A stretch of 64,000 nt of DNA from Stylophora pistillata (lineage: Eukaryota), in NCBI RefSeq assembly GCF_002571385.2, contig NW_019217786.1, positions 927,676 to 991,675 of the forward strand. Direction: 5' to 3'. Shown here in pieces: positions 4,775 through 63,479 of this stretch (position 1 is the first letter of the stretch; the number at the start of each line of letters is the position of its first letter). A program made the position numbers and the translations under genes. The notes under the pieces are model-generated. The model saw only the letters and a list, made by a program, of their open reading frames with translations. It was not told the origin of the DNA and made no database searches.

Positions 4775-7700
4775 CTAGTTATATTTCACAGCTCGCGGAC
4801 GCAATTGTCTGGCAATTATAGTTCTTGTGGAGTCTTGTTCTGTTTTTGCTTCACGACATTCCTAAGGGTTTCAAAAGATTGAATATAAAGTGAGCTACAC
4901 CAAAAACTCTGTGGCAGAAAAAACATCTGATTTTTCAAACTGGTTGGATTGTGCCTCACGGGGATCACTGTACCTGTTTTGCGGGAGACAAATATGCTGT
5001 CACCGCAGGTTTCTTGAACAACTTTTTTCCCTTTTTCGCGGAGGACTGAGTTAACTTTGGCGGTACATTTTCTCTTTCTTCGTTCGGTTGCGATGTGCCC
5101 TTTTCAGTGTCTTCACCTAAAAAAGAGATACACTTCAGAGCTCGATACGAGTCACGCCTATCAGTACGAATTAAGACATGTCCATGGTTCGATATTGCGT
5201 CATAACTTTGCAAAACTTTATACCTGCAGCGTTTTCTTGTAAGTCTTGGAAGAGTTTTCTCTTTTTTGATTCTACTTTGGGTGACTCTGTCTCGTCCTGC
5301 GGAGAGATTTCAATTCAGCATTTAATGGGCGCTCGAACAAAGCAACTCAGAATTCACAACTCCAATGCTTAGTATGATTCATTGACAACTTCTTCATCGA
5401 ACAAACTGACGCGTGTTAATTAGGTAATAGAAACAGATAACCTTACCACTGACGACTTTTTTGCTGATAAAGTCGTCGACTTTGTCCCGGATGTCGTCTG
5501 TTTGTTTCTCGCAGATTGTCGTGTGCTCGGGCGACTTCGCCTGCGGAAAAATAAGAGAATTCGTTGACTGACGAATGAGCCTTTAAACCGCTGTAGGGGA
5601 GAAGAATTGTTAAGTTGATTCCTGAGAAAAAAAGTTATCGAACAAGGTTTTTAAACTTTTCTTAAATATTTCCTAGCGATGTCTGTTTCGAAAAATGCAA
5701 TTGAAAAGTGCTTGTTTAGGAGAGATTGCGAACCAAACTTACTTAATTTATGCCCGTGTCGGCAATAATCACTATCCTGTGTACAGCCGTCCCCTACCCT
5801 CCACAAGAAATTCGGGAAGGGGGCCTTCCCAATTTTCTTTTGGAGGGTAGGGGGGCGACAGTACACAGGCTACATTTCATCAGCTCGCGGTATATTTTGA
5901 GGTAGCTGGAAGCAATGGTTTTTGAAGAAACACTTGAAAAAAACTTTTGGAAAAAACTTGACAGGTAGAAAGTCTCGAGCGTATGGAACAATTTTATGGA
6001 CAAGGCTCGGTTCAAACGTCAAATTTCACATGTGCCGAACTTTATGCATGAATTATAGAAAGTTATTATGATTCATTTATAACCCACAACTTGCCAGGAA
6101 TTCTATGAATGCCATACGCGAAAAAGCCAAAACAGCACAAAAAAATGGTGGGAGACGAAGGAATTTGTAGTTCTTGCTTTGCAAAGACAATATGTAGTTG
6201 TTTGACGAGCGGTAATTACTTTTGTATGAGGTGTTCGGTTTTTGAAAACGAAGAGGGCACTCCTGGGTGGAAAGTAGGAAAATCTGTGGCATATTGCGAG
6301 TCGTGTTTCAATGAAATGATGGAACGTGAATCAAGTCAGAGTATCATGACGAAAAGCCAAGATGACGAAGCAAAATTAAACAGCAAAACAAAAGCATCAG
6401 TAAAGCAATTAAGCAAACGCTCAATAGACGTCTTCGTCTAGGAAATAAGCAGTGCACCTGGAAATATTGACAACGAACAGAGTTACATTCGACGTTTGAA
6501 TCAAATGCCGTATTTAACTATTTTAGTTTACTAAAATAGGAGTTAAGGTCGGCACATGTGACATTCGACGTTTGAACTGGGCCTTATTTGAGAAAAATCA
6601 AGCAGTTTTAAACGACATTGACTTGAAACGTTTCTCGAGTCGTTGCTTTTAAGGTAATACTTTGCATCCTCGAGTAACGGGCTTCATGCATGCTTTTTGA
6701 TATATCCTTTTTCCCCTTAGATTGATTTTTTGAATTTCTCCAATTTAAAGGGGATAAATTCTGCACCAAAATTATGCAATAAAAAAAGGCCACCGTGCTC
6801 GTTCAAGATCTTAAGGCTATCCTACCTCTTTACCCGGTCTATCTAATGAAAAACAATACCCTGTTCTTGGAATGCGCGAGAGCTTATTCGCCTAATTAAG
6901 TAATTTTTTATGCGCACTGCAGGTTGCGCAGTACAATACTGAGGAATGCCTTAGGCAGCATGAATTGTTTTAACCACAAGACATTACGCGCTTAGTCCGC
7001 CATTTTCTATGCCATCTTAATTCGTGAAATTTCCATCGAAGGCCATCATCCAAGTGCATCTGAGCGATTTAAATATACTGAGGACTTATTATTGTGGCAT
7101 TCCTTTCAAAATATCTGTGGTATATTCAGGATAGTTAATTTAGTGGTTTCTCGCAATTGTCTCGAGAAAGTTGTTTATAACTTGGACCTTCCATGGAATC
7201 TCGCGTTCCTTTACAAGAAAGAATCACCCGAATGACAGAAAGGATTGTTCTAGCATTAAGAGTCAACTATAATAGCCAATTAACGGATATTTTGCTTCAT
7301 CAAAGCATTGACAAGCTTCGCACGAAGTGCAGGTCACAGGAAGCAAATGGCCGGTGAAAACTTGAACTATTGACGGGCCTGCACGACTTCGCCATTCGCA
7401 AGCGATTTTAAACTTGTGCTTTCATAGATTAGTTCTGACCAGGAGATATTTTACTGATTTTCCTTTGTGATGTGACTATATTACACAAACTCCGTTCGAA
7501 ATATATGAGAAAACATCAGGTAGAATTCCGCTTATTTGTGCTTCGAACTACTTTTTAACGCATATTAAAGTCTGTCCCCAACCAGGGACAGGTCAAAAGG
7601 TGACGCAATCCCATAGTGACCATGTACAAGCACATGGTCCCATGATCCTTTGCATCTTTTTTTTGCTATGCTTCGATCCACACATTACGTGAGCTTTTAG

Positions 7701-10700
7701 CGTAAACTTTTTCGCTTTATTTTTTTCCCCTATCAGCTCTCTCTACACCTCCTCGGTAACGAGGAAAGGTTCTGAAGATATTTTCTTCAAATTGACGTGG
7801 AGAATTTGCTACCTTTCTATAATATCAAGAAATGGATAGATGTTCTAGTCTTCTCGAATAAGGACAAATAAACCATAGGCCCCGTCTCTTGCAGGGTTAG
7901 GGGTAGGAGACGTTAATTTCCCACGCACGAGATTACTGTGTGGTGGATGTCCTCCCCTGGAGTGGGATGGGAGGGAAGGTGAGATCGTTACATGGACTGA
8001 AGCGGCTGCCAGAGGCGCCTGATAATACTGACGTCTGATCTCAACCTTATCATTGTAACTAGACACGTTTGTTGTTTAGAGTGCTTAAGACTTTCTTTCT
8101 TTCTTTCTTCTTTCTCAATCGTATAATACGATATCACGTAGAAAACGATCTCATCGTTCTCTTTCGCCACACGACCGCTATTACGACCGCCGACTCGGAG
8201 TGAGGCTAAAAGGCCCCAAACCCCCGATAATTCGCCGGCAACGGGCGAAAATACGCTGGATTCTATCCTGCAGACCTTACAGCAAATTCAGTCTGACATG
8301 GCGAAGACGAACGATCGGGTATCCTCAATGGAAACTCTACTACAACAACCTTCAGGTTTAGCGCCATCGCTCCCCACCTGCGACGACGAGATTTCTCTCA
8401 TGGCGCTCTCAGATAACGAGTTAGAGGATGGCCTCTCTCAGGCTACTGAGCCGCAGCAACAGGCTGTTAAAGCAAAACACAAGGCTAGTAAGCTATCACA
8501 CGAGGCCATTAGGCCATCAAACGAGACTTATGTGTCCCATACAGTGGAGACAACTCCACCGAAGGAAATGGCCCCTGACAACTCTTCACAGTCATTATAT
8601 GACCCTGACTCAGCCTTCTATTCATGGGCCCCTCCGAAGGATTTCACCTCCTTCTTAGAGAAACAGTTTCGTAGGAAACTCACCTATGACCAGGTACGTG
8701 AAATTCTCGACAATTATAATATTCCAGCTGTCGACTGTTTATTTACGCCTTCCCTGGACCCTTCTGTCGCAAATCAAATAAGCCCTCCGCAAACAAAGAA
8801 GTACGTACACTATCGCGATAAGGAGATGGCTACGGTCCAAAGGGCCTCTCTGCTCTCTTCATGATGCTCTTACCTCTGGAACCCAAGTTCCCATAGAGGA
8901 CATTAAATGTATAGTTGAGCAAACATTGTGTCTCCTTGGTTCAGCAAACCACCAAATGTCAATATTAAGTAGAAAGAAAGTTCCTGCAAATATCAATAAA
9001 GATAAAATAAGTCTGGCTGATCAGTCATTCCCTAATGCCAAACGTTTCCTGTTTGGAGAGGATTTCCCTGCAGTTGCTTCAAAACAAGCAGAACTCTCTC
9101 GTGGCCTAGCCAAGAACTTATCGCATGCCCAAAAGCCCAAAAAAACCTTCCAAAAACCTGGGAACACAAAGGAAAGGCAACGCCCAAGGACCCTGGGCAC
9201 TTTCTCTAAGTACCAAGCAAACCGACCAAAAAACTATCGGTCCTTTCGCCCCAACAAGGGTTCGTCAAACCAAGACTCAACAACTTCCAAGATCAGTGGA
9301 AGGAAATCACCTCAGATACTGAAACCTTAAACGTTGTGTTGGGATATCAAATCCCCTTTCACTCTGTTCCTGTTCAGTTACACGTTGCAGTTACAACATG
9401 TTCAGATTCGACAGCTCTCCTTGTAGATGCAGAGGTGCACAAAGTCCTCTCAATGGGGGCAGCAAAAGAGATTCCATTCTCCACAGAATTTCTATAGCAG
9501 AATCTTTCTGGTTCCGAAAAAAGAGGGAACATTTCGCCCTGTAATGGACCTGAGTCGTCGTCTCAACAAGTTTGTGGAGAACTTCCATTTTCGAATGGAA
9601 AATATCTCCTGTCTCAAAACTCTCTTAAAAAAGGGAGACTTTATGACATGCATAGACTTAAAGGATGCATATCTCTCCGTCCACGTACACAAATCCTCAC
9701 AAAGGTACCTTTGCTTCCAGTAGAGAAACAAAACGCTTCCCTTTCAAGGTCTGCCATTTGGGCTAAATACAGCCCCTAGAATGTTTACAAAGCTAATAAA
9801 ACCCATAGCTGCTTATCTACGGAAGAGAGGTATTCGAATAATCATCTACCTAGACGACTTCCTAATCCCAGGCTCCTCCTTAGAAGAGTCAACAGCAAAC
9901 ACCTGGCAAACACTGACCCTTCTCCAGCAGCTGGGCTTCACCATAAATTGGGAGAAGTCTATCCTGGAGCCCACCCAGTCATTAACATTTCTGGGCCTTT
10001 CTATAGACTCACAGACAATGTCACTCAGCCTTCCAGAGGGAGAGATCCTGAATATACAAAACAAATGTCAACAAAACCTTCTCCTCAACCCTACCCCTTC
10101 TGCTCGCGAAGTAGCAAGCCTGATAGGGACATGGGAGGCTGCTCGCCCTGCAATTTGGCAAGCCCTCCTCCATTCCAGATATCTACAAATACAGCTCATA
10201 AAGTCCCTGCAAGTGTCTCAAGACAATTACGAGACACTCAAGTCCTTGAACAGCAACGCTCATGCAGAACTATAGTGGTGGCACCAGAATGTTGTAACCG
10301 TAAACGGCAGTGCGATCAATCCTCCTCCCCCAGACCTCTACATAACATCAGACGCCTCCAAAACGGGCTGGGGTGCCTGGTGAGGGAACTTAACCGTAAA
10401 CGGCCGTTGGTTTCCTCTGGAAGCCAAACAACACATACACGTCCTCGAACTGAAAGCGGCCTATCTTGCCGTCAAAACCTTCCTCAAGGACAGGACCAAC
10501 ATTGTGGCATGTCTCCACAGCTGTAGCCCACGTAAACAACAAAGGGGGAACACGTTCCCCACAACTTGTCACTTTAACTCTGAAACTTTGGCAGTGGTGT
10601 CTTCATAAGTCAATCCTGATCACTGCTCAACACTTACCAGGCAAGCTAAACAGTGTAGTAGACAGAGAGTCCAGGGAGTTTTAAGACTTCAGCGAATGGC

Positions 10701-12283
10701 AAATAGATACACAGGTAATCCAACCCTTCATAACAGGGTGCAATGTAGACCTCTTTGCCTGTCGCCTAGCAGCTCTTCTCCCAACATACGCCAGTTGAAA
10801 ACCAGACCAAGGGGCTTTTTACACGGACGCAATGGCCCTAGACTGGGCCCCTCTGAAAGGCTACGCCTTTCCACCATTCGGCCTGATGGCGCCAGTCCTG
10901 AAAAAGGTCTCGCAGGACAAGGCGGATCTGGTCCTAGTAGGTCCAGTCTGGCAGGCGCAACCTTGGTGGCCAGTTCTTCTGAACCTCCTCACCGAAAAAC
11001 CAGTCATGATCCCGAACTCCAAATACTTGCTGAGGGACCCTGCATCCCCCCTCAGAATCCATCCAATGTATCCCAGGCTCCATCTGGCCGTCTTTCACGT
11101 ATCAGGGAACAAAATCAAACAGAAGGTTTTTCAGAGGACATTACCGAAATACTCCTCTCAGCCACTCGTACCTCCACACGTAAGACATACCAGTCAACCT
11201 GGGGAGAATGGAACAGCTGGTTTGGTAAACAGAAAGTTAATCCAGTTTCAGCAACACTAAATGATGTCCTTCTCTTTTTGACTGATCGCTTTAAAAGCGG
11301 GGCTGCGTATCGGTCAGTCAATGTAGTATTGTTCAGCTATCTCCTTCTGTCACCCAAATATTGACGGCTACTCCGTGGGCCAACATCCCCTTGTTGTTCA
11401 ACTCTTAAAAGGAATGCGAAACATGCGTCCTCCAAAACCCAGATACACACACACACACACGTGGGATGTGCAACTTGTAACTAAGTACTTGGATTCTCTT
11501 GGGAAAACTAAACTTTTTCCCCTAAAGCTCATCTCTATCAAGCTGGCAATACTTTTTGCCCTTACGTGTCCAAAGCGAGCTTCGTCCCTTGCTAAATTGG
11601 ACCTCCGTTACTGCCGTGTAGCCCCCGAGGGAGTTTCCTTTACGCTCACACTTCCGAGGAAGCGAGGTTCAACAGATCAGTTACCTCAAGCATTTTTTGC
11701 GTCCTTTCCGTACAACAAGAGACTCTGCCCTGTTGACACGCTCCGTGTTTACCTTAAGGCTACACGTCACTTGCGTCCAGTCGTCCCATCGTCAAAGCCA
11801 GATTCCTTGTTTGTCTCCTCTGTTAAACCTCATAACCCAATCACGACCCCAACACTTAGTCGATGGCTTCGCACAGCCATAAAGAATGCTGGAATAGACA
11901 CTGAGTTGTTTAAGGCTCATTCGGTTCGCGGAGCCTCGACCACAGCAGCAGCGAACAGTAACGTTCCACTTGACGATGTTATGAAAATGGCAGATTGGTC
12001 TCGTGTCAGTACCTTTCAAAAGTTTTATTACAAACCGGTTTTCAAGGCCAGTATGGTCACTGTACTTCAATAACTTACAAGTTTTCGTTACATTTCTATG
12101 GTCATTATGTAATAAACTGTTTATTGAAGTTACTTGTTTTCTGTCAAGTTATTTTTTATCTTGACCATACCCTACCCCTCTTCTGCACACTACATACATG
12201 TCAGGGCGATGAATTCTACCTGATGTTTTCTCATATATTTCGAACAGAGTCTGTGTAATATAATTAACAATTATTCCACGAGC

Positions 12284-12314
<31 letters not shown>

Positions 12315-12342
12315 AGAGGCGCGTAGCGCCGAGTTGGCTATA

Positions 12343-12379
<37 letters not shown>

Positions 12380-12527
12380 TTTTATTAAAAACGTTAAATT
12401 AAATTATTAAATTTTATTAAATTTTTAGCTCCCTTTTAATTTTAAGCTGACGCGTACGCTTACCATATTTGAAGATTATGGTATATTGGCTCATATATCA
12501 TAATGGCTAAGCCAATAAAAAGTCTTG

Positions 12528-12559
<32 letters not shown>

Positions 12560-15500
12560 TCCCAATTATACCAGGGCCACGAAGCGGCCTGCCAGTATAA
12601 TTCAAATTATATAAACAAACGAAGTGAGAAATATGTGAGTTCCACCCCTCAAACCTTGTATCTGGTATTTTCACACAGCGTTAAAGAGATGCAAAGGATC
12701 ATGGGACCATGTGCTTGTACAGGGGCACTATGGGATTGCGTCACCTTTTGACCTGTCCCTGGGTGGGGACAGGCTTTAATATGCGTTAAAAAGTGGTTCG
12801 AAGCACAAATAAGCGGAATTCTACCTGATGCTTTCTCATATATTTCTCATTTCGTTTGTTTATATAATTTCAATTATACTGGCAAGCCGCTTCGCGGCCC
12901 AGGTATAATTAGGATTAAGTTCGTTGGTTTTGAAGGAGGTGCCATTTCCCCATCAGTAGGTTCTTGAGGCTAGGTAAAGCCGGGTGACAGTACAAAAGAC
13001 TGTTTAATTCTGTGCGTTACTTTCTTTGTTTTTAAGTGACCCTCTTCTTTCGGAGCAGATAACCTAGTCTTATATCTCTCCAGAACTTCGATGGGTATCC
13101 TCTATTCCCTTCTTTAAGCGTATTTTGAAACTGTACGTGTTTGGTAAACACGGAGCGCGTGGGATTTGTTATTAGGATGCGAAACCCGTCTCTTTTTGCA
13201 AGTCCTTTCTTTACGCCACGTAAAAAGTGTTGACTGGCCAGCATGACTCTTGCCAGGCGTCGAGTGTGATATGAACGACTTTTTCCGCAGTTGCCCGTAT
13301 GTAAACTAAAACAATGGCGTGGTTGACAGGGATCCTTTGAGACGGTGGCCAACAATAAATCGAACGAAATGACTACTTTTAGATTTTTCAAGTTAGTACA
13401 GTAGCGACTGAAATGTTTCTTTCCTGAGGTAACTTTTTATCCCAAGCAATGAAAGCTAGTCAGTGAGTACGAGTGTGCACTTACGTTCTCCTTGGAGAGC
13501 CAGGAGTAAAGTCCTCGTCACTGGCCTGTGTTTTTTGTGCTTTCGTCCATTTGGTTTTGAGCTGGAACCAAGCAAGGAACGCAAGGGGTCACATAATAGA
13601 CAGTATCAGACAACTGGATAAATGATATATACCGTCACCCCGTTGTGTCAGGACAGAGAGGATACCAAACGTGAAAAAGCTGTCGGTTAACTTTTTGTCC
13701 TGTTTCACACTTTTGTCCGAAGAATCAATTAAGAAAGAATTAAACACGCAATGAATGGATTTCTTTTTATCGGATTCTGGTGTTCGCGCAAAGATTCCTA
13801 AGAATCTCCATGCAACCGAGGAAGACACTGCTCCATACTCTTGTATCTTTCACTTTGACTACTGTAACTTGCTTCTATTTACTCTACCTAAATATCAACT
13901 TGATCTTTTACAGAAAGTTCAGAACGCCTTTCGCCATATGTATCCTTTCAGTACCCTATAATGATTGCCCCGTGGCGATCCCAGCAAACGCAAGGATCCA
14001 AGATTGGCAACTCATTCATTCAAGTAATCAAGGACTTGGATAATTACATAAAATTCCAGGTAAAATCCACACCTCTTCCTGCCATTAGAGGCGATGTGTT
14101 GAATAAAAAAAAAACATTGATTTTATTCCTCGATCTATTCCACGAAATTTTTGGTTGGTACTTTTGTTTAATGTCGGAATCAGGGAATTGTTATGATTAA
14201 CTTAAACTTTTCGCCAACATTGAACCAAGAATGAACTAGCGCGTCAAGATTTACCTGAGCCAATGGTATGTCACTGCTGTTCCTCTTCAAGGATCTCTTC
14301 GCTGATCTTGAGGAAGACGTTGTCGGATCCGCCTTGTCTGCTACTTCATGGTCCTAAAGAAAGAAAGAAACAAATAAACAAACAAACTGTTTTAGGGTCT
14401 TGCTACCAGCTCCTCAGGTCGAAATAGTGAAACAGCTTTCGCAATAATAATAATTGCGAAATGATCTCGAACCGATATAATGTCCCTTTTCTTCATACAA
14501 GTTTAAAGCAGAAAAAGTAACAAATGAGCGTTAGAATAAAAAAAGACAAGACTTAATTTGATTTCGAACACCCACAGCACTACTAGCACTGATGAGTGTA
14601 CAGAGTCAACAGGGATGCAAAATGAAACCCATAAACTTTTATTCTCACTGAAGAAGAGGAATCTGTTTTTGAAGAGACGCTTCTTTCAGCAGCGAGTTCT
14701 CTTTCCACGTTTTCTTTCTCATGTTTGATCCCCTCTATACTCCTATCCTTGTCGTCAAGTTGTCTCTGGTAATCCCGTTTCGTTTTGCGCAGTTCCTCTT
14801 CCATCTCTCGTCTCAAATCCTGCTTACACTGCTCGCGGATGGTGGACAGTTTGATTTCATACTCCGCCTTTTTGGCGTTAGCCACCTCTAATGTTTGACG
14901 CATGGTTTTCATGATGTTGTCTCTTGAATCGTTCATTTTGCTGATTTCTTCATCCTTCTTTACTAGCTTTTCCTCCAGAGTAGCACGCTCTTTCTGCAAG
15001 ATGGCTATTTCCTTCTCCATGTTCTGCATCCGCTCGGAGGCGCTACGCTCATAAACTTCGTTCTTGTTGGACATATTTTTCATGGCATCACTAGCAGCCA
15101 TCGCTTGGTTCTTCAAGTTGGTAATTTCCTTTTTCTTTATGTCCAGCTCCTTGGTTGCAAAGGCGTTCTTTTCTTGCCAAGTTTGCAGTTCTGTGGAAAG
15201 AGTCTCCAATTCACCTTGACGTTCGTCAAGTGCCTGTCCTTGTTCAGCTAATATTATATCTTGCTCTTCTAAAACTTTTTTCAGGTGGGCAATCACATCT
15301 TTGTCCTTTCTTGCATCTGCGGAAAACAAGAACNNNNNNNNNNNNNNNNNNNNNNNNNNNNNNNNNNNNNNNNNNNNNNNNNNNNNNNNNNNNNNNNNNN
15401 NNNNNNNNNNNNNNNNNNNNNNNNNNNNNNNNNNNNNNNNNNNNNNNNNNNNNNNNNNNNNNNNNNNNNNNNNNNNNNNNNNNNNNNNNNNNNNNNNNNN

Positions 15501-37699: not shown

Positions 37700-40600
37700 T
37701 TATGGTCCTTGCTCTACAGATGTGCTGGTGCTTGCTAGAAGATTTGAGCTTTCATTGATCAATGTTCTGTGGTCATTTTGAAACTCCCCAGATCTGTCCA
37801 TCCTTGGGGGTGGATCACCTGATGGAGATTTGCAACACTGAAGACATTCCTTAGCAGCAAGTTTCAGACGACCTCTGAATTTTTCAGTGAAAAGACAAAA
37901 TAGCAAGAAGTTTGCCAATCCTTGGCTGCTGTCACCAATTCCCTGAGAATTTTAAAAACAAAACAATTTCAATTTAACAATTTTGTTATGAACAATAATA
38001 ACTGTGACCCATAAGCATTTGTAAGTGATGTATGTATGTATCTATAGCAANNNNNNNNNNNNNNNNNNNNNNNNNNNNNNNNNNNNNNNNNNNNNNNNNN
38101 NNNNNNNNNNNNNNNNNNNNNNNNNNNNNNNNNNNNNNNNNNNNNNNNNNNNNNNNNNNNNNNNNNNNNNNNNNNNNNNNNNNNNNNNNNNNNNNNNNNN
38201 NNNNNNNNNNNNNNNNNNNNNNNNNNNNNNNNNNNNNNNNNNNNNNNNNNNNNNNNNNNNNNNNNNNNNNNNNNNNNNNNNNNNNNNNNNNNNNNNNNNN
38301 NNNNNNNNNNNNNNNNNNNNNNNNNNNNNNNNNNNNNNNNNNNNNNNNNNNNNNNNNNNNNNNNNNNNNNNNNNNNNNNNNNNNNNNNNNNNNNNNNNNN
38401 NNNNNNNNNNNNNNNNNNNNNNNNNNNNNNNNNNNNNNNNNNNNNNNNNNNNNNNNNNNNNNNNNNNNNNNNNNNNNNNNNNNNNNNNNNNNNNNNNNNN
38501 NNNNNNNNNNNNNNNNNNNNNNNNNNNNNNNNNNNNNNNNNNNNNNNNNNNNNNNNNNNNNNNNNNNNNNNNNNNNNNNNATGAGGTCATTCAGTCTTGC
38601 ATTACCGACCCCAGCAGACTGTAGTATGGTCTGCTGGGTTGGTTGGTTTATAAAGGCACAGCTGAGATTGTTGCACTTTTATCTTCTGGTAATATTCGCC
38701 CATAGAGTACACCACAGCACAGTTCTAAAAAAGTTCTCATTCGACAATTGTTTCTTGATCATTGGAACATTGCTTGAAAAAGATTTGCAATTGAATAAAC
38801 ATAACAACATCTTGAGAAAATCAACAGAACTATCACCTGACTCCCATCTTTAAAACCCCTTAACTAAAATCTGGCATGTTTTGTGAAGCAACTGGTTAAC
38901 CAGCTGCTTTATTTTGACCGTAGTATACTCAAAAACAAACCTGAAGATAAAGAAGAGCTTTTTCCCAATCTGACTTCAAAGCTGCAGCAGTGATTTGGTT
39001 GTCTAACAAATAAATGATGAAGCGAATTGTACCCCAAATACGCACCAGAATAAAAATGATGGGTAGCATTGTCAGCCTTCTCTCTGCTTTAATAGCTGAT
39101 TCTTTGTTCTGAAGAGATGTGAACTGCTTTTTTCGATGATAGACCTACATGTAAAGAATTTAAAGAGTTCCGTGCAGATTAACAACTCTAGAGGAATATG
39201 GAATGTGGTCTAACAAGGGAGAGAATATGCTTCGTGTGGATTGAAAATGGAGTTCTAGTGCTTAAGTGTCATTTTGTAAATCAGTTTTAAATAATCAAAT
39301 TCTTATTCAACCATTCATGTAAGTTAATTTCCAATCATTTTTAAATAATTGAACAGTCTAATGAAATTAACCATATCAATGGTTGCATATTCTTTGATAT
39401 ACACAGTTCTGTATTGTTTTGATTTGAATCATTATTACTATTATTATACTAATCAAAGCTATAAAAAAATTCTGAAATGTGATTGGTTATCGCCAGCCCA
39501 ATTTAGGCATTAATTAAACAATAGAGTGTTTCTGTCGAGGAACTATTGGCTGATAGTTGCCCCGCGGAAATTTGATGTTCTCAAAACAAATATTTGCCCA
39601 AGAAGCAAAGCTTCGAGGGCAAATATGCCTGATAGTTACGAGACCTAAACACTCTATTGTTTTTATTGTTCACCACTAAATTTTCTTCCGCGCCTACAGC
39701 TTGTCATAAATGTCAATAATTCGCAACCGTACATTGGCTAAATAATACCTTATACCTGTCAGAATTGAAAAGTCACTGTTTTTCCGATATGCTTAACTTG
39801 ACGGCTGTCAAACTAATCAAAACTTTTCACGGATGAGTACTACCAATCCAGGTATTTTCCCCAGACGGGCACAATCCATCGGGGTATTTTCTGCGGGCGG
39901 GCACTATGGGCTGATAGTGTCTCTCCACGGATGAACACTATCGCATCACGTGATCGATTTAAACCAATAAGAACCGGAGAAAATTTAGTAGTGAACTATA
40001 ATAGGACATAGTGTACCTCATGCTTTCAATCGGGCAGTGTGATAGGACAGTTGACACAGCATGCCTGTGTAAGTGGTCAGTATGTGTCATGTGTGTGTGC
40101 TGTTTAGTTCATTTCATCAAGTTAACTTTTCTTTTTTTATGAAAATGTATATCTGATCTTTAGTTTCTTTCTCAAATGTCATTATAGTTATTATTAATTG
40201 GTAACAGGACTTTGTGTCATCCAATTCTATCTGTAACCATACTTGTGATTAACAAATGGCTTTCCCATTTTGCATTTGTGCAATTTTGTTGATCACTAGT
40301 ATGATTACATGTGAAATTGGGCTCTCCTGAGTCCTCTTACCATTATTCATTATTTCATTTACAATTTGCACATTTCCAAAGTAATGACAACATTTCTGGT
40401 CTAATAGGAAGAAAACAGAATCAGTTTGAATCAGAAATTCGGATTCTTTGAAGTAGGAAGGAAAGAAAATCCTTAGTGACAAAGCATAGCTAAGTCTCGT
40501 CTGAAAGGTACAAGTAGCTCACAACATTACCTCCTTACGAATATGATACTTTAAACCCCAAAAAAATGTAGAAATGAGAACATATGCAGCCATTTCCCAC

Positions 40601-45892: not shown

Positions 45893-46374
45893 TTAGGACC
45901 CGTGGGGATAAAGTTGTCACTCACAAGTAATTAAGTATATTAAAGCGTGACTTTCTGATTGGACGACGTTAAGCGATGAACAATTCAAAATATCTAACGA
46001 GGGTGGGGAACTATTGGCGTTTAATCTTCGTTTAACGTCGTCCAATCAGAAAAGGGCAATCAGCGTGACGGTTTCTGGCTGGCACACGAGAATCTTGTTA
46101 CGCATCCCAGACGTTTTAATACTGTGGGATTTTTGATTTTCTTCGAGGGCTAGCTGCGGTCCGTTTGGATGGATTTTCGATTGGAAGGTACGAGGAGAAT
46201 CGTGAATCTTTTGACCTTAATGCTGCGAAGTTTGAAAGCGGAGCGATGCGATTCTCGGGGGAAAAATCGCTCTGGCGCTTGAACCCTTTCAAAACAAGGT
46301 TTTCACCCTTGTCTTTTCTTTTATGTATTACATTAACGACGAACTCAAGCCCACTAACGACGAACTCAAGCCCA

Positions 46375-47169: not shown

Positions 47170-50100
47170 ATGAATTTTGCCAATGCATCAACAACGCATC
47201 CACCCATTACTTTGAGTTTTGGAGACATCGGAAACACGACTCTGAATCGTGCTTTGGTAACCATTACCTGCTTTTTATCTCTGCTTGGAGCATCAATAAT
47301 TATTGCTACATATATCGCATGGAAGGATATGAGGTCGACGTCAAGGAGAATCTTGGTTTACATCTCCATCGCTGACAGTATCGTGGCCGCAAGTTATATC
47401 TTTGGCGCATATCTACCTCAGAACACGAACTCGGGAGCTTGTACAGCACAGAGTTATTTATCCACCACCGCTTGCTTATGGTCCTACTTATGGACTCTTT
47501 TTATGGCTATATTTTTGTACACAACGATAGCCATGCAAAAACCCAGCACGGCTCTAAAGATGTTTTGGATGTATCATGGCATAGGATGGGGAGTGCCTGT
47601 GTTTGTCGTGAGCCTTGCTCTGTTTGAAGGTAAGCTGGGGAACGACCGTGACATTTACAGTTCTGCCTGGTGTTGGATAAAGGTAGAAGGTAGTGGAAAA
47701 AGCGCTGGCCACCACGATTACATCATTTGGATGCTTGTCACTGGCAAAGCATGGGAAATGCTGGTCTTTGTGCTTATTTTGATTTTCTATGGATTGCTCA
47801 AGTGGCATCTGCGCGAAGAGGTAAAAACAGTTTAAAATATTAAACAGTTCTGTCAAATGTTTAACTGATATTGATTCATGATGCATTCCGCAAAAATATT
47901 TAATCTTTACTCACGCTAAGAAATTCATCAGGCCACAATTTATAATGAAAAAAACAATAGGTGGTTCGCACGTTACGTCATTTCCGCCATGTTGGTGGAC
48001 GTAAACAATAGATATCTCATTAGCTTCTTTTTGTTCATCGACCAGCATTTGTTCCTTTCACCATTGTTACCTGTGTCTCTAGAGATTGGTTGGAAACCAC
48101 ATATATAAGCTAAACAGAGCATTTGTAATTTAAACATTATAAATAACTTACTACAGTGTAGATATTATCAAATTATTCACCAAGTAAAAGCGTGCTTTTC
48201 ATGAGTGCCGTGTATCTAATCTATAAATGTGAGATGTATTAATCGCTAAGCGATTCTATCCCTCTAAGGTTAAAGGTTAGACTGTTGCAAGGGCTTGCAC
48301 CAATCTAATTAAAATTATCCGATCTTTTTAGCATGAAAATTGTTAAACTGTGACTTTCATTTGAGAATTGGTTCTACGTATCGATAAAGTAATTATTAAA
48401 AGGGTCAATCAGTCATTAATCTTAAAAACTGTTTTTCACGCAATCCAAACTTAACGGACTAGCTGTCACGCTTCCTTTGCGGAAATTATGTTTTTGTCGC
48501 TTTGAGAGAACGACGGGAAGAACTTATGGTTGGAAAGTCAATCTATTATTTTATCCATAACCATTTCATTTATTTATTTATGCAGTAAATTCATTTCTTT
48601 ATGAAACATTTGAAAGAATGCTCAGTGTTTCCTGATCGCATGTTAATGTTCAATTTTATTCGCGGGACTTTTTAATTCATCGTAATCTTGGCGATAACTA
48701 ATCAGAACGATGAAAGGTGGACCTGTTGTTTTTATAGGCTCGTTTTCCCGTCATTTTAAGCTCCAGTCCACATTGTAATGTTGGTACCATACACCGAATG
48801 TAAATATGGCGTCCAATTTGAGTTGCCATTTTTTTGGACTGACTAGCCTCTCACACATGTAATAATCCTTTTGTATTTCCACGTGAAGACGAGGCTAGTG
48901 AGTCCAGAACAATGGCAACTAAAATTGGAAGCCATATTTGCATTCGGTGATTATAGTAAGGTATTGTGCCGTAAGATCTGGAATCAGAGAGCACGAGGCT
49001 GTGAAATTGCACTAAGTTTCCTGGCAAGCACTGAATAAACAACGATTCTTCCAATTTCCGACTCTCATTTGATTCATTTCCATAAAAGCACCTGGAAATC
49101 GAACCTACGGTGTTCGTCTCTGTGGTATAACCTAAGCTGGTCACATCATTACCTTTTCTTTTAGATAGGTTGAATTCTTTTCTAGTAGCATTCTTTTTTT
49201 TTATTCTAAACTGCTTTGTTTTCAGTTGCACCGTAACGAAAGGCATAGGATAAGAAGTAATGCTCTGGATGCAGCAAAAAGGGCTGACAAAAGACTAACT
49301 TGTGTTCCCGTTATTTTCCTAATTCTACGGGCCTGTGGAGTACTTCGCTTCTGTATTTATATATCTTCATCAGCAGAGGAGTTGCACTCGGCAGAAACGC
49401 GGAAAATCCAAGAAGTTTTGGTTTATTTGCAGGTAGGTGGACAACATCTTAGCTGACCTAGGCTTGCAACAGCTACACAACTCGAGGTTATAAAGCGAAC
49501 AGAAAAAGGATAGACAGTTTAACCCTAAAATTCGTAAAAAAAAAAAACTGACTAGCATCTCATTCCCCCTTACAACATAGCCTCTGAATTAAACATTAAG
49601 GTCATGAGAATAAATGAACTGATCACCAACTAAAGAAGCTCTTCATCGTCAAAAAAATTCCCCATTTCAACACCTTAAAATGTATAGAGAACAGTTTGGA
49701 AAATATGCATACTGATGTTAGGGTGAAAAGGGTTCATGGAAAGGTCAAAAGAAATACCAAACCACAATAACTAGTTGTACCTGTTGCTAACAACAAGTGG
49801 TTTAACTTTTAGGTTCGGGGCTTTTCCCAGGGGAATCTCATTTAGTATCACGCCCCATTTGCTGAAAAACAGTTTGGCTCGCTACAGAGGAGATACTTCA
49901 GAAGGCTTATTGAAAGACAACTTTGGTGAATTGAAATAAAAAAAAGAGGTAGAACCTCGAAGATTTCTTTTCGCGAAAAATAATTAAACAGCGGCCATAT
50001 TGTGTAAACGGCTTAACTTATGATAAAGCGAATCGCTTTTAGGACAATCCACAATCTTTCTTTATTGCGTAATTTTCGGACAGTATTATCCTTTTTTTCC

Positions 50101-59952: not shown

Positions 59953-60125
59953 AAAATAACCACATTTTCCGGGCTCCATAACGTGATAAAGCCGCGCGGG
60001 ATGTTGGGGGAGAACACGAGGAAAGTTAAGTCACGAGCTGAAGGCGAGTGATCTTACAAGCTTTCCGAGTGTTTTCTCCCAACATCCTTACTGGCTTTAT
60101 TACGTTATAGAACCCGGGAAAAAAA
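59953..60125. repeat. Long hairpin repeat (Crypton-like)
   Basis: GGATGTTGGGGGAGAACAC..GCTGAAGGC loop..GTGTTTTCTCCCAACATCC. Confidence 0.55.
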
Positions 60126-62900: not shown

Positions 62901-63164
62901 TACTAATTTAATTTAATTTATTAGCTTTGCCAAAAATACATACAATATAGAACGCGGATAAATTACAAAAACAATAACGGGCAGGCAACCACAACAGCGA
63001 TAGCCAATTACTGTGGTCCCAAGAGTAAAACGATTACATCAATAGTAGTAGTAGTAGTAGTGAACTTTATTTGTGTGTCGCGAGAAAATCTAGCGCGTAG
63101 CACTAATTGGGGACACACAGGGTAACAACGCTTAAAAAAAAGTTAGAAATCNNNNNNNNNNNCT

Positions 63165-63479
63165 ATATCTTATTAACCAAGCGCGAGGGCCGTACTGGGA
63201 GAATATCGGCCCGAGGTCTTGACAGTACGGACCGAGCGCAGCGAGGTCCGTACAAAAAAGACCGAGGGCCGATATTCTTCCAGTACGGTCCCGAGCAAGC
63301 TTGGTTAATAAGAGATTTATTATACGACTGAAGTTCAAAGGGACACAAGTGCGGTATCATTCGGGACCATTCGGGACAGTGCCCGGTCCAATACTTAGAG
63401 AATATCGGACCGGCAATAGAGCATTTTGATTGGTTGATTTTAGTTATTGGCCCTCTGACTGCCCGAGTCGTGTAATAAT
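63165..63479. mobile_element. Crypton-like hairpin element
   Basis: ATCTTATTAACCAAGC..GCGCAGC loop..GCTTGGTTAATAAGA stem, distal GATTGG, ends in AATAAT. Confidence 0.6.

What the first reader, a model, noticed from the sequence alone, without database searches (positions are those of the whole stretch)
12211..12639. Hairpin element inserted precisely on the DIRS circle-junction sequence in the internal complementary region (ICR)
Seen: 12211-12262 is the reverse complement of the left end (7477-7528) and 12557-12639 is the reverse complement of the right end. Joined, they read GTGTAATA-TA-ATCCCAATT, the predicted circle junction. A 292-bp hairpin element interrupts it exactly at this TAAT, which is duplicated. 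Known: the ICR templates circularisation, and the junction is the substrate of the tyrosine recombinase; Cryptons are also YR-mobilised. Inference: a non-coding parasite may use the DIRS recombination site or recombinase, a satellite-like relation that would also block replication. Caveat: TAAT looks like the generic target of these elements (see 39515), so chance is possible.
Basis: partly seen in the sequence, partly recalled or inferred. Interest (0 to 1): 0.78.

Follow-up and report, generated by a model that had tools for sequence, protein, structure and literature searches.

The report
Hairpin repeat splits DIRS junction copy
A 296-bp non-coding hairpin repeat, laid out like a Helitron2/Helentron-type rolling-circle transposon, has landed independently in two copies of a coral DIRS retroelement at the exact point where the internal copy of its end-to-end junction lies; the site fits the repeat's usual target motif, but not well enough to explain two hits.

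Summary
Window 7477-12917 is a decayed DIRS retroelement. Its ICR halves (12211-12263 and 12560-12639) are separated by a 296-bp repeat (12264-12559).

- **Empty site:** a contig from a related coral joins the two halves directly (GTGTAATATAATCCC). This is a true insertion with no target duplication, only ATAAT microhomology.
- **The repeat:** it has about 2,100 copies in the genome and forms spacer-free tandem arrays of period 297. It inserts at (A)TAW^WW-N4-WTAT.
- **Layout:** read on the minus strand it matches Helitron2/Helentron non-autonomous elements. It starts with T, has an 11-nt terminal repeat whose complement sits just upstream of a giant 3' hairpin, and makes no TSD. A second, sequence-unrelated family (39514-40001) shares this layout.
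- **Second DIRS copy:** the only other ICR-bearing copy (C796, 92% identical) carries the repeat at the same nucleotide and orientation. Its copy equals the family consensus, so the two insertions are independent. C796 also holds a further copy in a junction-like motif of its right ITR.

The ICR junction is therefore a real hot spot that my motif models do not explain. No autonomous partner could be examined.

The parts
7477..12917 (+). Decayed DIRS1-type retroelement (host of the insertion)
   Evidence: ITRs, ICR, YR and RT domains. ORFs are fragmented, largest 232 aa. Related copies lie at C796, C104 and C86.
7482..7670 (+). Left inverted terminal repeat
   Evidence: 90% complementary to 12674-12862 (I1).
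12674..12862 (+). Right inverted terminal repeat (the element continues to 12917)
   Evidence: I1. The last 83 nt (12835-12917) are 92% complementary to ICR-right (I2).
12211..12263 (+). ICR left half, the reverse complement of the element's left end
   Evidence: I3 (96%). The boundary is ambiguous within ATAAT (12260-12264).
12560..12639 (+). ICR right half, the reverse complement of the element's right end
   Evidence: I2 (92%). It is contiguous with the left half in a related species' contig.
12264..12559 (-). Inserted hairpin repeat (family 1). It is 296 bp here and 297 in the consensus. Read on the minus strand it has a Helitron2/HINE-like layout.
   Evidence: The tandem period of 297 equals the element length. 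Empty site.
12266..12381 (.). Long imperfect hairpin (stem of about 55 bp) with apex GA-GGCGC-GTA-GCGCC-GA
   Evidence: I4. Folds (z -13.7; z -12.5).
12382..12392 (+). Internal 11-mer TTATTAAAAAC, complementary to the element's other end (3'-ATIR in minus-strand reading)
   Evidence: Direct reading. It pairs with 12549-12559 in the fold of a whole unit, and the stem runs across the array junction.
12549..12559 (+). Terminal 11-mer GTTTTTAATAA (5'-ATIR in minus-strand reading)
12860..12879 (+). Junction-like motif in the right ITR (TTATATAATTTCAATTATAC). This is the homologous site of the second hairpin insertion in copy C796 (between 12874 and 12875).
   Evidence: L043/L032 read. PWM score 12.5-13.6, among the best in the whole window.
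39514..40001 (-). Hairpin repeat family 2. It is unrelated in sequence but has the same layout and the same TAA^T flanks.
   Evidence: At least 40 copies of about 90% identity end at these coordinates. Its own pair of complementary 14-16-mers is 14/16 matched.

Best explanation
The insert is a non-autonomous transposon of the Helitron2/Helentron (HINE-like) type. It is copied through a single-stranded or circular intermediate by a Rep-type (HUH) enzyme supplied in trans.

Read on the minus strand it begins TTATTAAAAAC. It carries the complement of that 11-mer immediately upstream of a very long 3' hairpin, and it ends 2-3 nt after the hairpin. It integrates in one orientation, without target duplication, at sites that resemble its own end-to-end junction: (A)TAW^WW-N4-WTAT.

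The DIRS junction sequence, kept as a reverse-complement copy in the ICR, contains that motif (TATAA^TCCCAATTAT). The break falls at the same point as the DIRS's own ends. The ICR-right and right-ITR ends hold several further copies of the motif.

The DIRS tail is therefore a landing pad. It was hit independently in both ICR-bearing copies of this family at the junction, and once more in the right ITR of C796.

What is shown and what is inferred:
- **Shown:** the insertion, the empty site, the independence of the two events, the target motif and the layout.
- **Inferred:** the enzyme class, and the reason the junction is hit far more often than its motif score predicts. One possible reason is that on the minus strand the break lies right after the 3' arm of the 83-bp ICR-right/right-end stem, which mimics the element's own hairpin-then-cut 3' end.
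For: **Layout**
- The 11-nt terminal and internal complementary pair and the 3' hairpin are seen.
- Family 2 has the same layout with different but complementary sequences.
- This matches the published definitions: 5' T, 5'-ATIR 0-2 nt from the end, 3'-ATIR immediately upstream of the 3' hairpin, no TSD (PMC3627910); subTIRs plus a 3' palindrome and no target modification, with a Helentron known in a sea anemone (PMC4067079).

**Behaviour**
- Spacer-free head-to-tail arrays of period 297 occur at several loci.
- There is no TSD: the empty site is, and the boundary base varies with the target and keeps (TA)n phase.
- True sites resemble the element's own end more than background sites do (mean 8.8 vs 7.8). 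The ICR site is in the top 0.3% of background TAW sites.
- The five best PWM sites of the DIRS all lie in ICR-right or the right-ITR end.

**Context**
- Helitron Rep genes are present in the genome: 42 PF14214 hits, with open frames up to 2,013 aa.
- The two events are independent: the DIRS copies are 92.4% identical over 1,985 bp, while the inserts differ at 2 of 199 positions, the C796 insert equals the consensus and there are no shared derived variants.
Against: - No autonomous partner was linked to these termini.
- The 3' hairpin is far longer than in described Helitron2/HINE families, so the internal repeat lies about 118 nt from the end rather than 20-60 nt.
- A 5' hairpin involving the 5' repeat is not evident.
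- The target is not the T-rich/TT site of HINEs.
- Motif scores do not explain the hot spot. The ICR junction scores only 7.75 (true-site median 9.1). There are about 3,100 equally good sites per Mb, giving an expected occupancy of about 0.1%, yet 2 of 2 copies are hit.
- Other insertion sites show no extra flanking secondary structure (43 sites), so the stem-mimicry idea is not general.
Confidence: 0.55

Rival explanations
1. The hairpin repeat is mobilised by a tyrosine recombinase (DIRS or Crypton type). A circle carrying the junction AATAA|TTAACAATTAT recombines with similar sites. The DIRS ICR is a copy of the DIRS junction, so it acts as a preferred pseudo-attachment site.
For: - The element's junction, its targets and the ICR junctions of three DIRS families share ATAAT-N3-5-ATTAT, read as two inverted half-sites. 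The families are the window's, C101/L048 and C922/L051.
- The hairpin's break point coincides with the DIRS's own ends.
- A short direct repeat (TAW...TAA) flanks copies, as described for Cryptons and for the DIRS junction trinucleotide (PMC3212892, PMC7192593).
- Tandem arrays fit circle integration.
- The internal region complementary to both ends has the same order as a DIRS ICR.
- The hot spot at the ICR (2 of 2 copies) exceeds what motif models predict.
Against: - The same layout is the published hallmark of Helitron2/HINE, so it is not specific to DIRS.
- The flanks of the three DIRS copies lack the hairpin's target motif, so the DIRS enzyme does not show this target choice.
- The likeness between the hairpin junction and the ICR is modest: p of about 0.05 by shuffling, although in register.
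- There is no covariation or structural signal in the targets.
- Hairpin copies in three other DIRS-like loci are not at ICRs.
- No YR-encoding relative with these termini was seen among 30 YR loci.
Confidence: 0.15
2. The two ICR insertions are one event: either an insertion into an ancestral DIRS master that went on transposing, or a later gene conversion between DIRS copies. On this view there is no hot spot.
For: The site and orientation are the same in both copies. ICR-left is better conserved between the copies (2 differences in 52 nt) than the upstream DNA.
Against: - From the DIRS divergence of 7.6%, about 15 differences are expected in 199 bp, and 2 are seen.
- The C796 insert is identical to the family consensus.
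- The window insert carries minor-subfamily variants that C796 lacks, for example alignment column 204.
- An ICR split by 297 bp should block DIRS replication (PMC7192593).
- The DIRS flanks differ, so this is not a segmental duplication.
Confidence: 0.1
3. It is a cut-and-paste MITE of a DDE transposase with a 2-3-bp TA/TAA target duplication and very short terminal inverted repeats (TTAACAA/TTAAAAA). The arrays arose by unequal exchange.
For: 41 of 71 copies are flanked by TAA on both sides. The ends share a 7-8-nt imperfect inverted repeat. The empty site holds a single TAA.
Against: - 30 of 71 copies have TAT on the left and TAA on the right. This split is unrelated to copy age.
- In (TA)n targets the phase is kept only if nothing is duplicated.
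- The conserved downstream TAT block lies on one side only.
- Insertion is orientation-specific.
- Spacer-free arrays occur at several loci.
Confidence: 0.08

Closest known systems
Helitron2 non-autonomous elements (e.g. Helitron-1N1_CRe) and Helentron-associated interspersed elements (HINE/DINE-1)
   Same: - Non-coding, high copy number, no TSD and orientation-specific insertion.
- The 5' end starts with T.
- A short repeat at the 5' terminus has its complement just upstream of a 3' hairpin.
- Some families have a fixed target (after TTTT in Chlamydomonas).
- They are associated with tandem repeats.
(PMC3627910, PMC4067079, PMC7492417)
   Different: - The hairpin stem is about 55 bp rather than 5-20 bp and reaches within 2-3 nt of the end.
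- The target is (A)TAW^WW-N4-WTAT, not TT or a T-rich site.
- Whole units, not internal repeats, form the arrays.
- No Rep-encoding partner has been tied to it.
DIRS1-type retroelements and their internal complementary region
   Same: An internal segment is complementary to both ends joined, in the same order (left end ... rc(left)+rc(right) ... right end). There is no TSD, and a short repeat is shared by junction and target (PMC7192593, PMC8969392).
   Different: The repeat has no long ITRs and no coding capacity. The complement of one end is only 11 nt. DIRS copies here integrate at sites without the hairpin's motif.
Cryptons (YR DNA transposons)
   Same: They have no TIRs. [quoted passage not shown]
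   Different: Cryptons are low-copy and coding. No hairpin layout has been described for them.
IS91/ISCR and IS200/IS605 (bacterial HUH transposons)
   Same: They have terminal hairpins, insert next to a short target that resembles an element end, make no TSD and can give read-through or tandem products (from established knowledge and PMC10288648).
   Different: They are prokaryotic and their sequences are unrelated. This is an analogy only.

Membership tests
DIRS1-type retroelement (host, 7477-12917) | Inverted terminal repeats, plus an ICR whose 5' part complements the start of the left ITR and whose 3' part complements the end of the right ITR | tested here: met
   (I1, I2, I3). The uninterrupted ICR is seen.
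DIRS1-type retroelement (host, 7477-12917) | Encodes a tyrosine recombinase and a reverse transcriptase | tested here: met
   PF00589 at E 8e-10. PF00078 at E 1e-6, just under the curated cut-off. The ORFs are broken.
Helitron2 / Helentron non-autonomous (HINE) | Short (8-15 nt) asymmetric terminal inverted repeats: one 0-4 nt from the 5' end, the other subterminal and immediately upstream of a 3' hairpin | tested here: met
   The 11-nt pair 12549-12559 / 12382-12392 abuts the hairpin. Family 2 has a 14/16 pair. The distance to the 3' end is about 118 nt, against the published 20-60 nt.
Helitron2 / Helentron non-autonomous (HINE) | No target-site duplication, and orientation-specific insertion | tested here: met
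   Empty site. Flank analysis.
Helitron2 / Helentron non-autonomous (HINE) | 5' terminal T and insertion upstream of a T (TT target) | tested here: inconclusive
   In minus-strand reading the element starts with T. The base after the element is T in 41 copies and A in 30, of 76 copies. The site is not T-rich.
Helitron2 / Helentron non-autonomous (HINE) | 5' hairpin involving the 5' repeat | tested here: inconclusive
   The whole-unit fold pairs the 5' repeat with the internal repeat, not with a local partner.
Helitron2 / Helentron non-autonomous (HINE) | Termini shared with an autonomous RepHel-encoding element | not tested
   Rep genes exist (42 PF14214 hits), but their DNA could not be fetched.
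YR-mobilised non-autonomous element (DIRS or Crypton parasite) | Termini or junction shared with a YR-encoding element of the same genome | tested here: inconclusive
   Only a short shared motif (ATAAT-N-ATTAT.CCA), in register, with p of about 0.05. None of 30 YR loci carries the hairpin termini except as insertions.
YR-mobilised non-autonomous element (DIRS or Crypton parasite) | Same target choice as the supposed helper | tested here: not met
   The flanks of DIRS copies in the window, C796 and C104 lack the (A)TAW^WW-N4-WTAT motif. Only 3 copies were available.
MITE of a DDE transposase | Terminal inverted repeats plus a constant-length TSD | tested here: not met
   The left flank is TAT and the right TAA in 30 of 71 copies. 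The flank conservation is asymmetric.
Retrozyme / ribozyme-bearing tandem repeat | Self-cleaving ribozyme motif in the unit | tested here: not met
   Rfam scan of an array on both strands at E<=1 gave only sub-threshold miRNA-like hairpin hits.

The most novel reading that the evidence does not exclude
The hairpin repeats and the DIRS elements of this coral use the same junction core (ATAAT-N3-5-ATTAT, cut at the same position) because they are processed by the same or an interacting machinery. On this reading the ICR junction is a true preferred attachment site. The repeat would then be either a satellite of the DIRS recombinase or a rolling-circle element that specifically disables DIRS copies by splitting the ICR they need to replicate.
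Probability: 0.12. Interest if true: 0.8.

Novelty: new variant of a known kind. Interest (0 to 1): 0.42.

Why it matters
The result gives a precise target motif and an empty site for a large, still unclassified class of hairpin repeats in a coral genome: about 2,100 copies of one family, and at least two families with the same layout.

It also shows a reproducible nested insertion at the one DIRS sequence known to be essential for DIRS replication (the ICR). If the hot spot reflects enzyme recognition rather than local sequence, it would be a rare natural handle on what the DIRS junction looks like to a recombinase or Rep protein.

If not, it is an ordinary case of a site-selective transposon hitting a motif-rich repeat.

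Tried and rejected
- **Ribozyme or retrozyme idea:** there is no ribozyme in an array.
- **Long flanking stems as a general target feature:** 43 sites show no difference between the two flanks.
- **Target palindrome as a base-paired structure:** there is no covariation between the two arms, and stems are barely longer than in shuffles apart from (TA)n sites.
- **PWM or likeness to the donor as an explanation of the double hit:** both give an expected occupancy of about 0.1%.
- **Hairpin copies at the ICRs of other DIRS families:** L047 is in the YR C-terminus, and L052 and L064 lie upstream of the YR.
- **A loose-end sequence as a lead to a longer relative:** there were no genomic matches. It came from the 1-nt indel at 12527.
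- I reran it reading the consensus from file.
Full report
**Observation.** The window holds a DIRS1-type retroelement at 7477-12917.
- The ITRs 7482-7670 and 12674-12862 are 90% complementary.
- 12211-12262 is 96% complementary to the left end 7477-7528, and 12557-12639 is 92% complementary to the right end 12835-12917.
- The ORF at 11375-12070 is a phage-integrase-type tyrosine recombinase, and 9781-10272 is a reverse-transcriptase fragment.
- Coding is broken into ORFs of at most 232 aa.
- Between the two ICR halves lies a repeat with a long hairpin, arms 12266-12304 and 12343-12381.

**It is a real insertion.**
- The repeat is dispersed in the window's own 398-Mb assembly. More than 50 full-length hits are 95-98% identical. 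Its 24-nt end has 2,118 matches with at most 2 mismatches, about one per 188 kb.
- Laying contigs of public runs showed the filled junction, without differences, in three samples of the same coral (records 7, 23, 29).
- In a related species (run X14) one contig has ...TATTTCGAACGGAGTTTGTGTAAT directly before window position 12556.
- The insert is 12264-12559 (296 bp, against 297 in the family consensus). ATAAT stands at both boundaries, so the break can be placed anywhere within those five letters. The DIRS's own ends fall inside the same letters.

**Ends, target and arrays.** I collected 76 non-redundant full copies, 79-100% identical to a majority consensus that I used only to measure divergence.
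- The left flank is (A)TA followed by A (41 copies) or T (30 copies). Then come TTAACAATT...GTTTTTAA and TAA.
- The right flank has T or A at +1, W at +2, and a second conserved block WTAT ten bases downstream: T in 57 of 64, A in 51 of 64.
- The A/T base before TTAAC does not track copy age. In (TA)n targets it keeps the microsatellite phase, so it belongs to the target.
- The element is therefore 297 nt, TTAAC...TTTTTAATAA, inserted without duplication at (A)TAW^WW-N4-WTAT.
- The length of 297 nt equals the period of head-to-tail arrays at several loci (C9, C62, C17, C2), which have no spacer.
- The target resembles the element's own head-to-tail junction (AATAA^TTAACAATTAT). True sites are more like it than background TAW sites, mean 8.8 against 7.8 of 18.

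**What kind of element.**
- Directly after the hairpin comes TTATTAAAAAC, the exact complement of the other end, GTTTTTAATAA. The long stem therefore runs across the unit junction in arrays (z -13.7).
- In a single unit the two 11-mers pair and close the molecule next to the hairpin (z -12.5).
- Read on the minus strand the layout is: 5' T; an 11-nt repeat at the very 5' end; its complement immediately upstream of a 3' hairpin; a 2-3-nt tail; no TSD.
- That is the published definition of Helitron2 (PMC3627910). It is close to that of Helentron-associated HINE/DINE-1 elements (PMC4067079). A Helentron is known in a sea anemone, and such elements carry tandem repeats in oysters (PMC7492417).
- A second family in the window (39514-40001) has unrelated sequence and at least 40 copies of about 90% identity ending at these coordinates. 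It has the same start (TTAAACAAT...), the same TAA^T flanks and its own complementary pair, 14 of 16 matched. The layout is therefore conserved while the sequence is not.
- Helitron Rep genes are present: 42 PF14214 hits with frames up to 2,013 aa. Membership therefore rests on structure only.
- Departures from the known families are the very long hairpin, the non-T-rich target and the lack of a clear 5' hairpin.
- No ribozyme was found.

**Independent hits.**
- The DIRS family has only two ICR-bearing copies in the assembly, the window and C796. The copy at C86 lost its ICR by recombination between GAATTCTACCTGATG repeats. C104, C94 and C407 are fragments.
- C796 carries the hairpin repeat at the same nucleotide and in the same orientation.
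- The DIRS flanks of the two copies differ, so these are separate DIRS insertions.
- The DIRS sequences are 92.4% identical over 1,985 bp. The two inserts differ at 2 of 199 comparable positions.
- The C796 insert equals the family consensus, and the window insert has seven differences, some shared with a minor subfamily that C796 does not follow. From the DIRS divergence about 15 differences would be expected. These are two events.
- C796 has a further, inverted copy 42 nt from the end of its right ITR, at a site homologous to window 12874/12875. The N gap between the two C796 copies was left alone.

**Is the motif enough?**
- A position weight matrix from 49 other sites puts the five best sites of the whole DIRS (scores 12.3-13.6) in ICR-right and the right-ITR end. 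One of them is the C796 right-ITR site. Only nine sites in the 64-kb window score 12 or more.
- The DIRS tail is thus a cluster of target motifs. The DIRS junction contains ATAAT-N4-ATTAT, and the motif recurs 40 nt further in.
- The same junction core is present in the intact ICRs of two other DIRS families, whose recombinases are 45-47% identical to this one: GTATAATCACAGATTATGCC in L048 and GTATAATTACAGACTATGC in L051.
- The junction site itself scores only 7.75, against a true-site median of 9.1. About 3,100 sites per Mb score as well. With about 2,100-3,000 copies, occupancy of such sites is about 0.1%.
- By likeness to the element's own end the junction is in the top 0.3% of background TAW sites, but that class is also occupied at only about 0.1%.
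- Two hits in two copies are therefore not explained by my sequence models. The junction is a hot spot for a reason still open.
- One geometric parallel is inference only. On the minus strand the break lies directly after the 3' arm of the 83-bp ICR-right/right-end stem, whose last letters (GGTATAATTGGGATTA) resemble the last letters of the element's own hairpin arm (GGAATAATTGTTAA). Other insertion sites show no excess flank structure and no covariation in the small palindrome, so this cannot be the general rule.

A recombinase-based reading is not excluded.
- In its favour: the short direct repeat at both ends, the inverted half-sites around the break, circle-like arrays and an ICR-like internal complement all also fit Crypton- or DIRS-type recombination (PMC3212892, PMC7192593). 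The hot spot favours some recognition of the junction.
- Against it: the layout is the hallmark of Helitron2. The three DIRS copies sit at sites without the hairpin's motif. The likeness between the hairpin junction and the ICR is only modest. Hairpin copies in three other DIRS-like loci are not at ICRs.
- I put it at about 0.15.

**Consequence.** The ICR is required for DIRS-1 retrotransposition (PMC7192593). A 297-bp insert between its halves should disable a copy, but both copies here are already decayed.

**Earlier notes of this scan.** Other first-stage notes (titles only) flag the same class of hairpin repeats elsewhere in this genome. They include a shared GA-stem-GNA-stem-GA apex, which family 1 also shows (GA GGCGC GTA GCGCC GA). 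These notes are leads, not support.

**Verdict.** The element is best read as a Helitron2/HINE-like non-autonomous transposon with a defined target that the DIRS junction happens, or is built, to carry. The junction is hit more often than the motif predicts. The link to the DIRS recombinase is unproven.

Noticed in passing
window 39514-40001: Second hairpin-repeat family (488 bp). It has at least 40 copies of about 90% identity and 714 first-look candidates. It shares the start TTAAACAAT, the TAA^T flanks and the terminal/internal complementary pair layout of family 1, but its sequence is unrelated.
   Followed up: partly
window 63163-63320; also 48792-48949, 45952-46052, 59965-60121: Further long hairpins. 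The one at 63163 starts TTAACCAAGCG after ...CTTA and may belong to the same class. The others were not examined.
   Followed up: no
L038/L042 (G000:C86:38336-39128): This DIRS copy of the same family lacks the ICR. The YR 3' end is joined to the right ITR at the GAATTCTACCTGATG direct repeat (window 12211 and 12816), which looks like a deletion by recombination between those repeats.
   Followed up: partly
L003, L012, L015 (G000:C62:319297-320412; C9:312064-313546): Spacer-free tandem arrays of 4-5 or more whole hairpin units (period 297). In arrays the hairpin stem extends 11 bp across each unit junction, with a TT bulge next to the break.
   Followed up: yes
L047 2166-2347 and L066 2738-2936: A family-1 copy inside a DIRS YR reading frame is cut short by another repeat beginning ATTATTTCGTTACCCCCACCGACGC. 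The same sequence follows a 96-nt-arm hairpin in L066, so this is probably yet another hairpin family.
   Followed up: no
L056 2822-3000: A family-2 hairpin copy lies about 140 nt downstream of a DIRS-like inverted-repeat pair. In all, 3 of 27 other YR loci hold family-1 copies where about 0.5 would be expected. This may only reflect repeat-rich neighbourhoods.
   Followed up: partly
runs X10, X12, X15, X17-X20; run X14: RNA-seq contig sets of coral samples hold about 0.2-0.3 of the sampled words of 11700-13200, about the share that the hairpin repeat makes up. The repeat may be transcribed or carried in transcripts. It is also abundant in the related species.
   Followed up: no
window 7440-12969: Another first-stage note says the DIRS landed in an exon of a KIF20B-like gene. 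I did not examine this.
   Followed up: no
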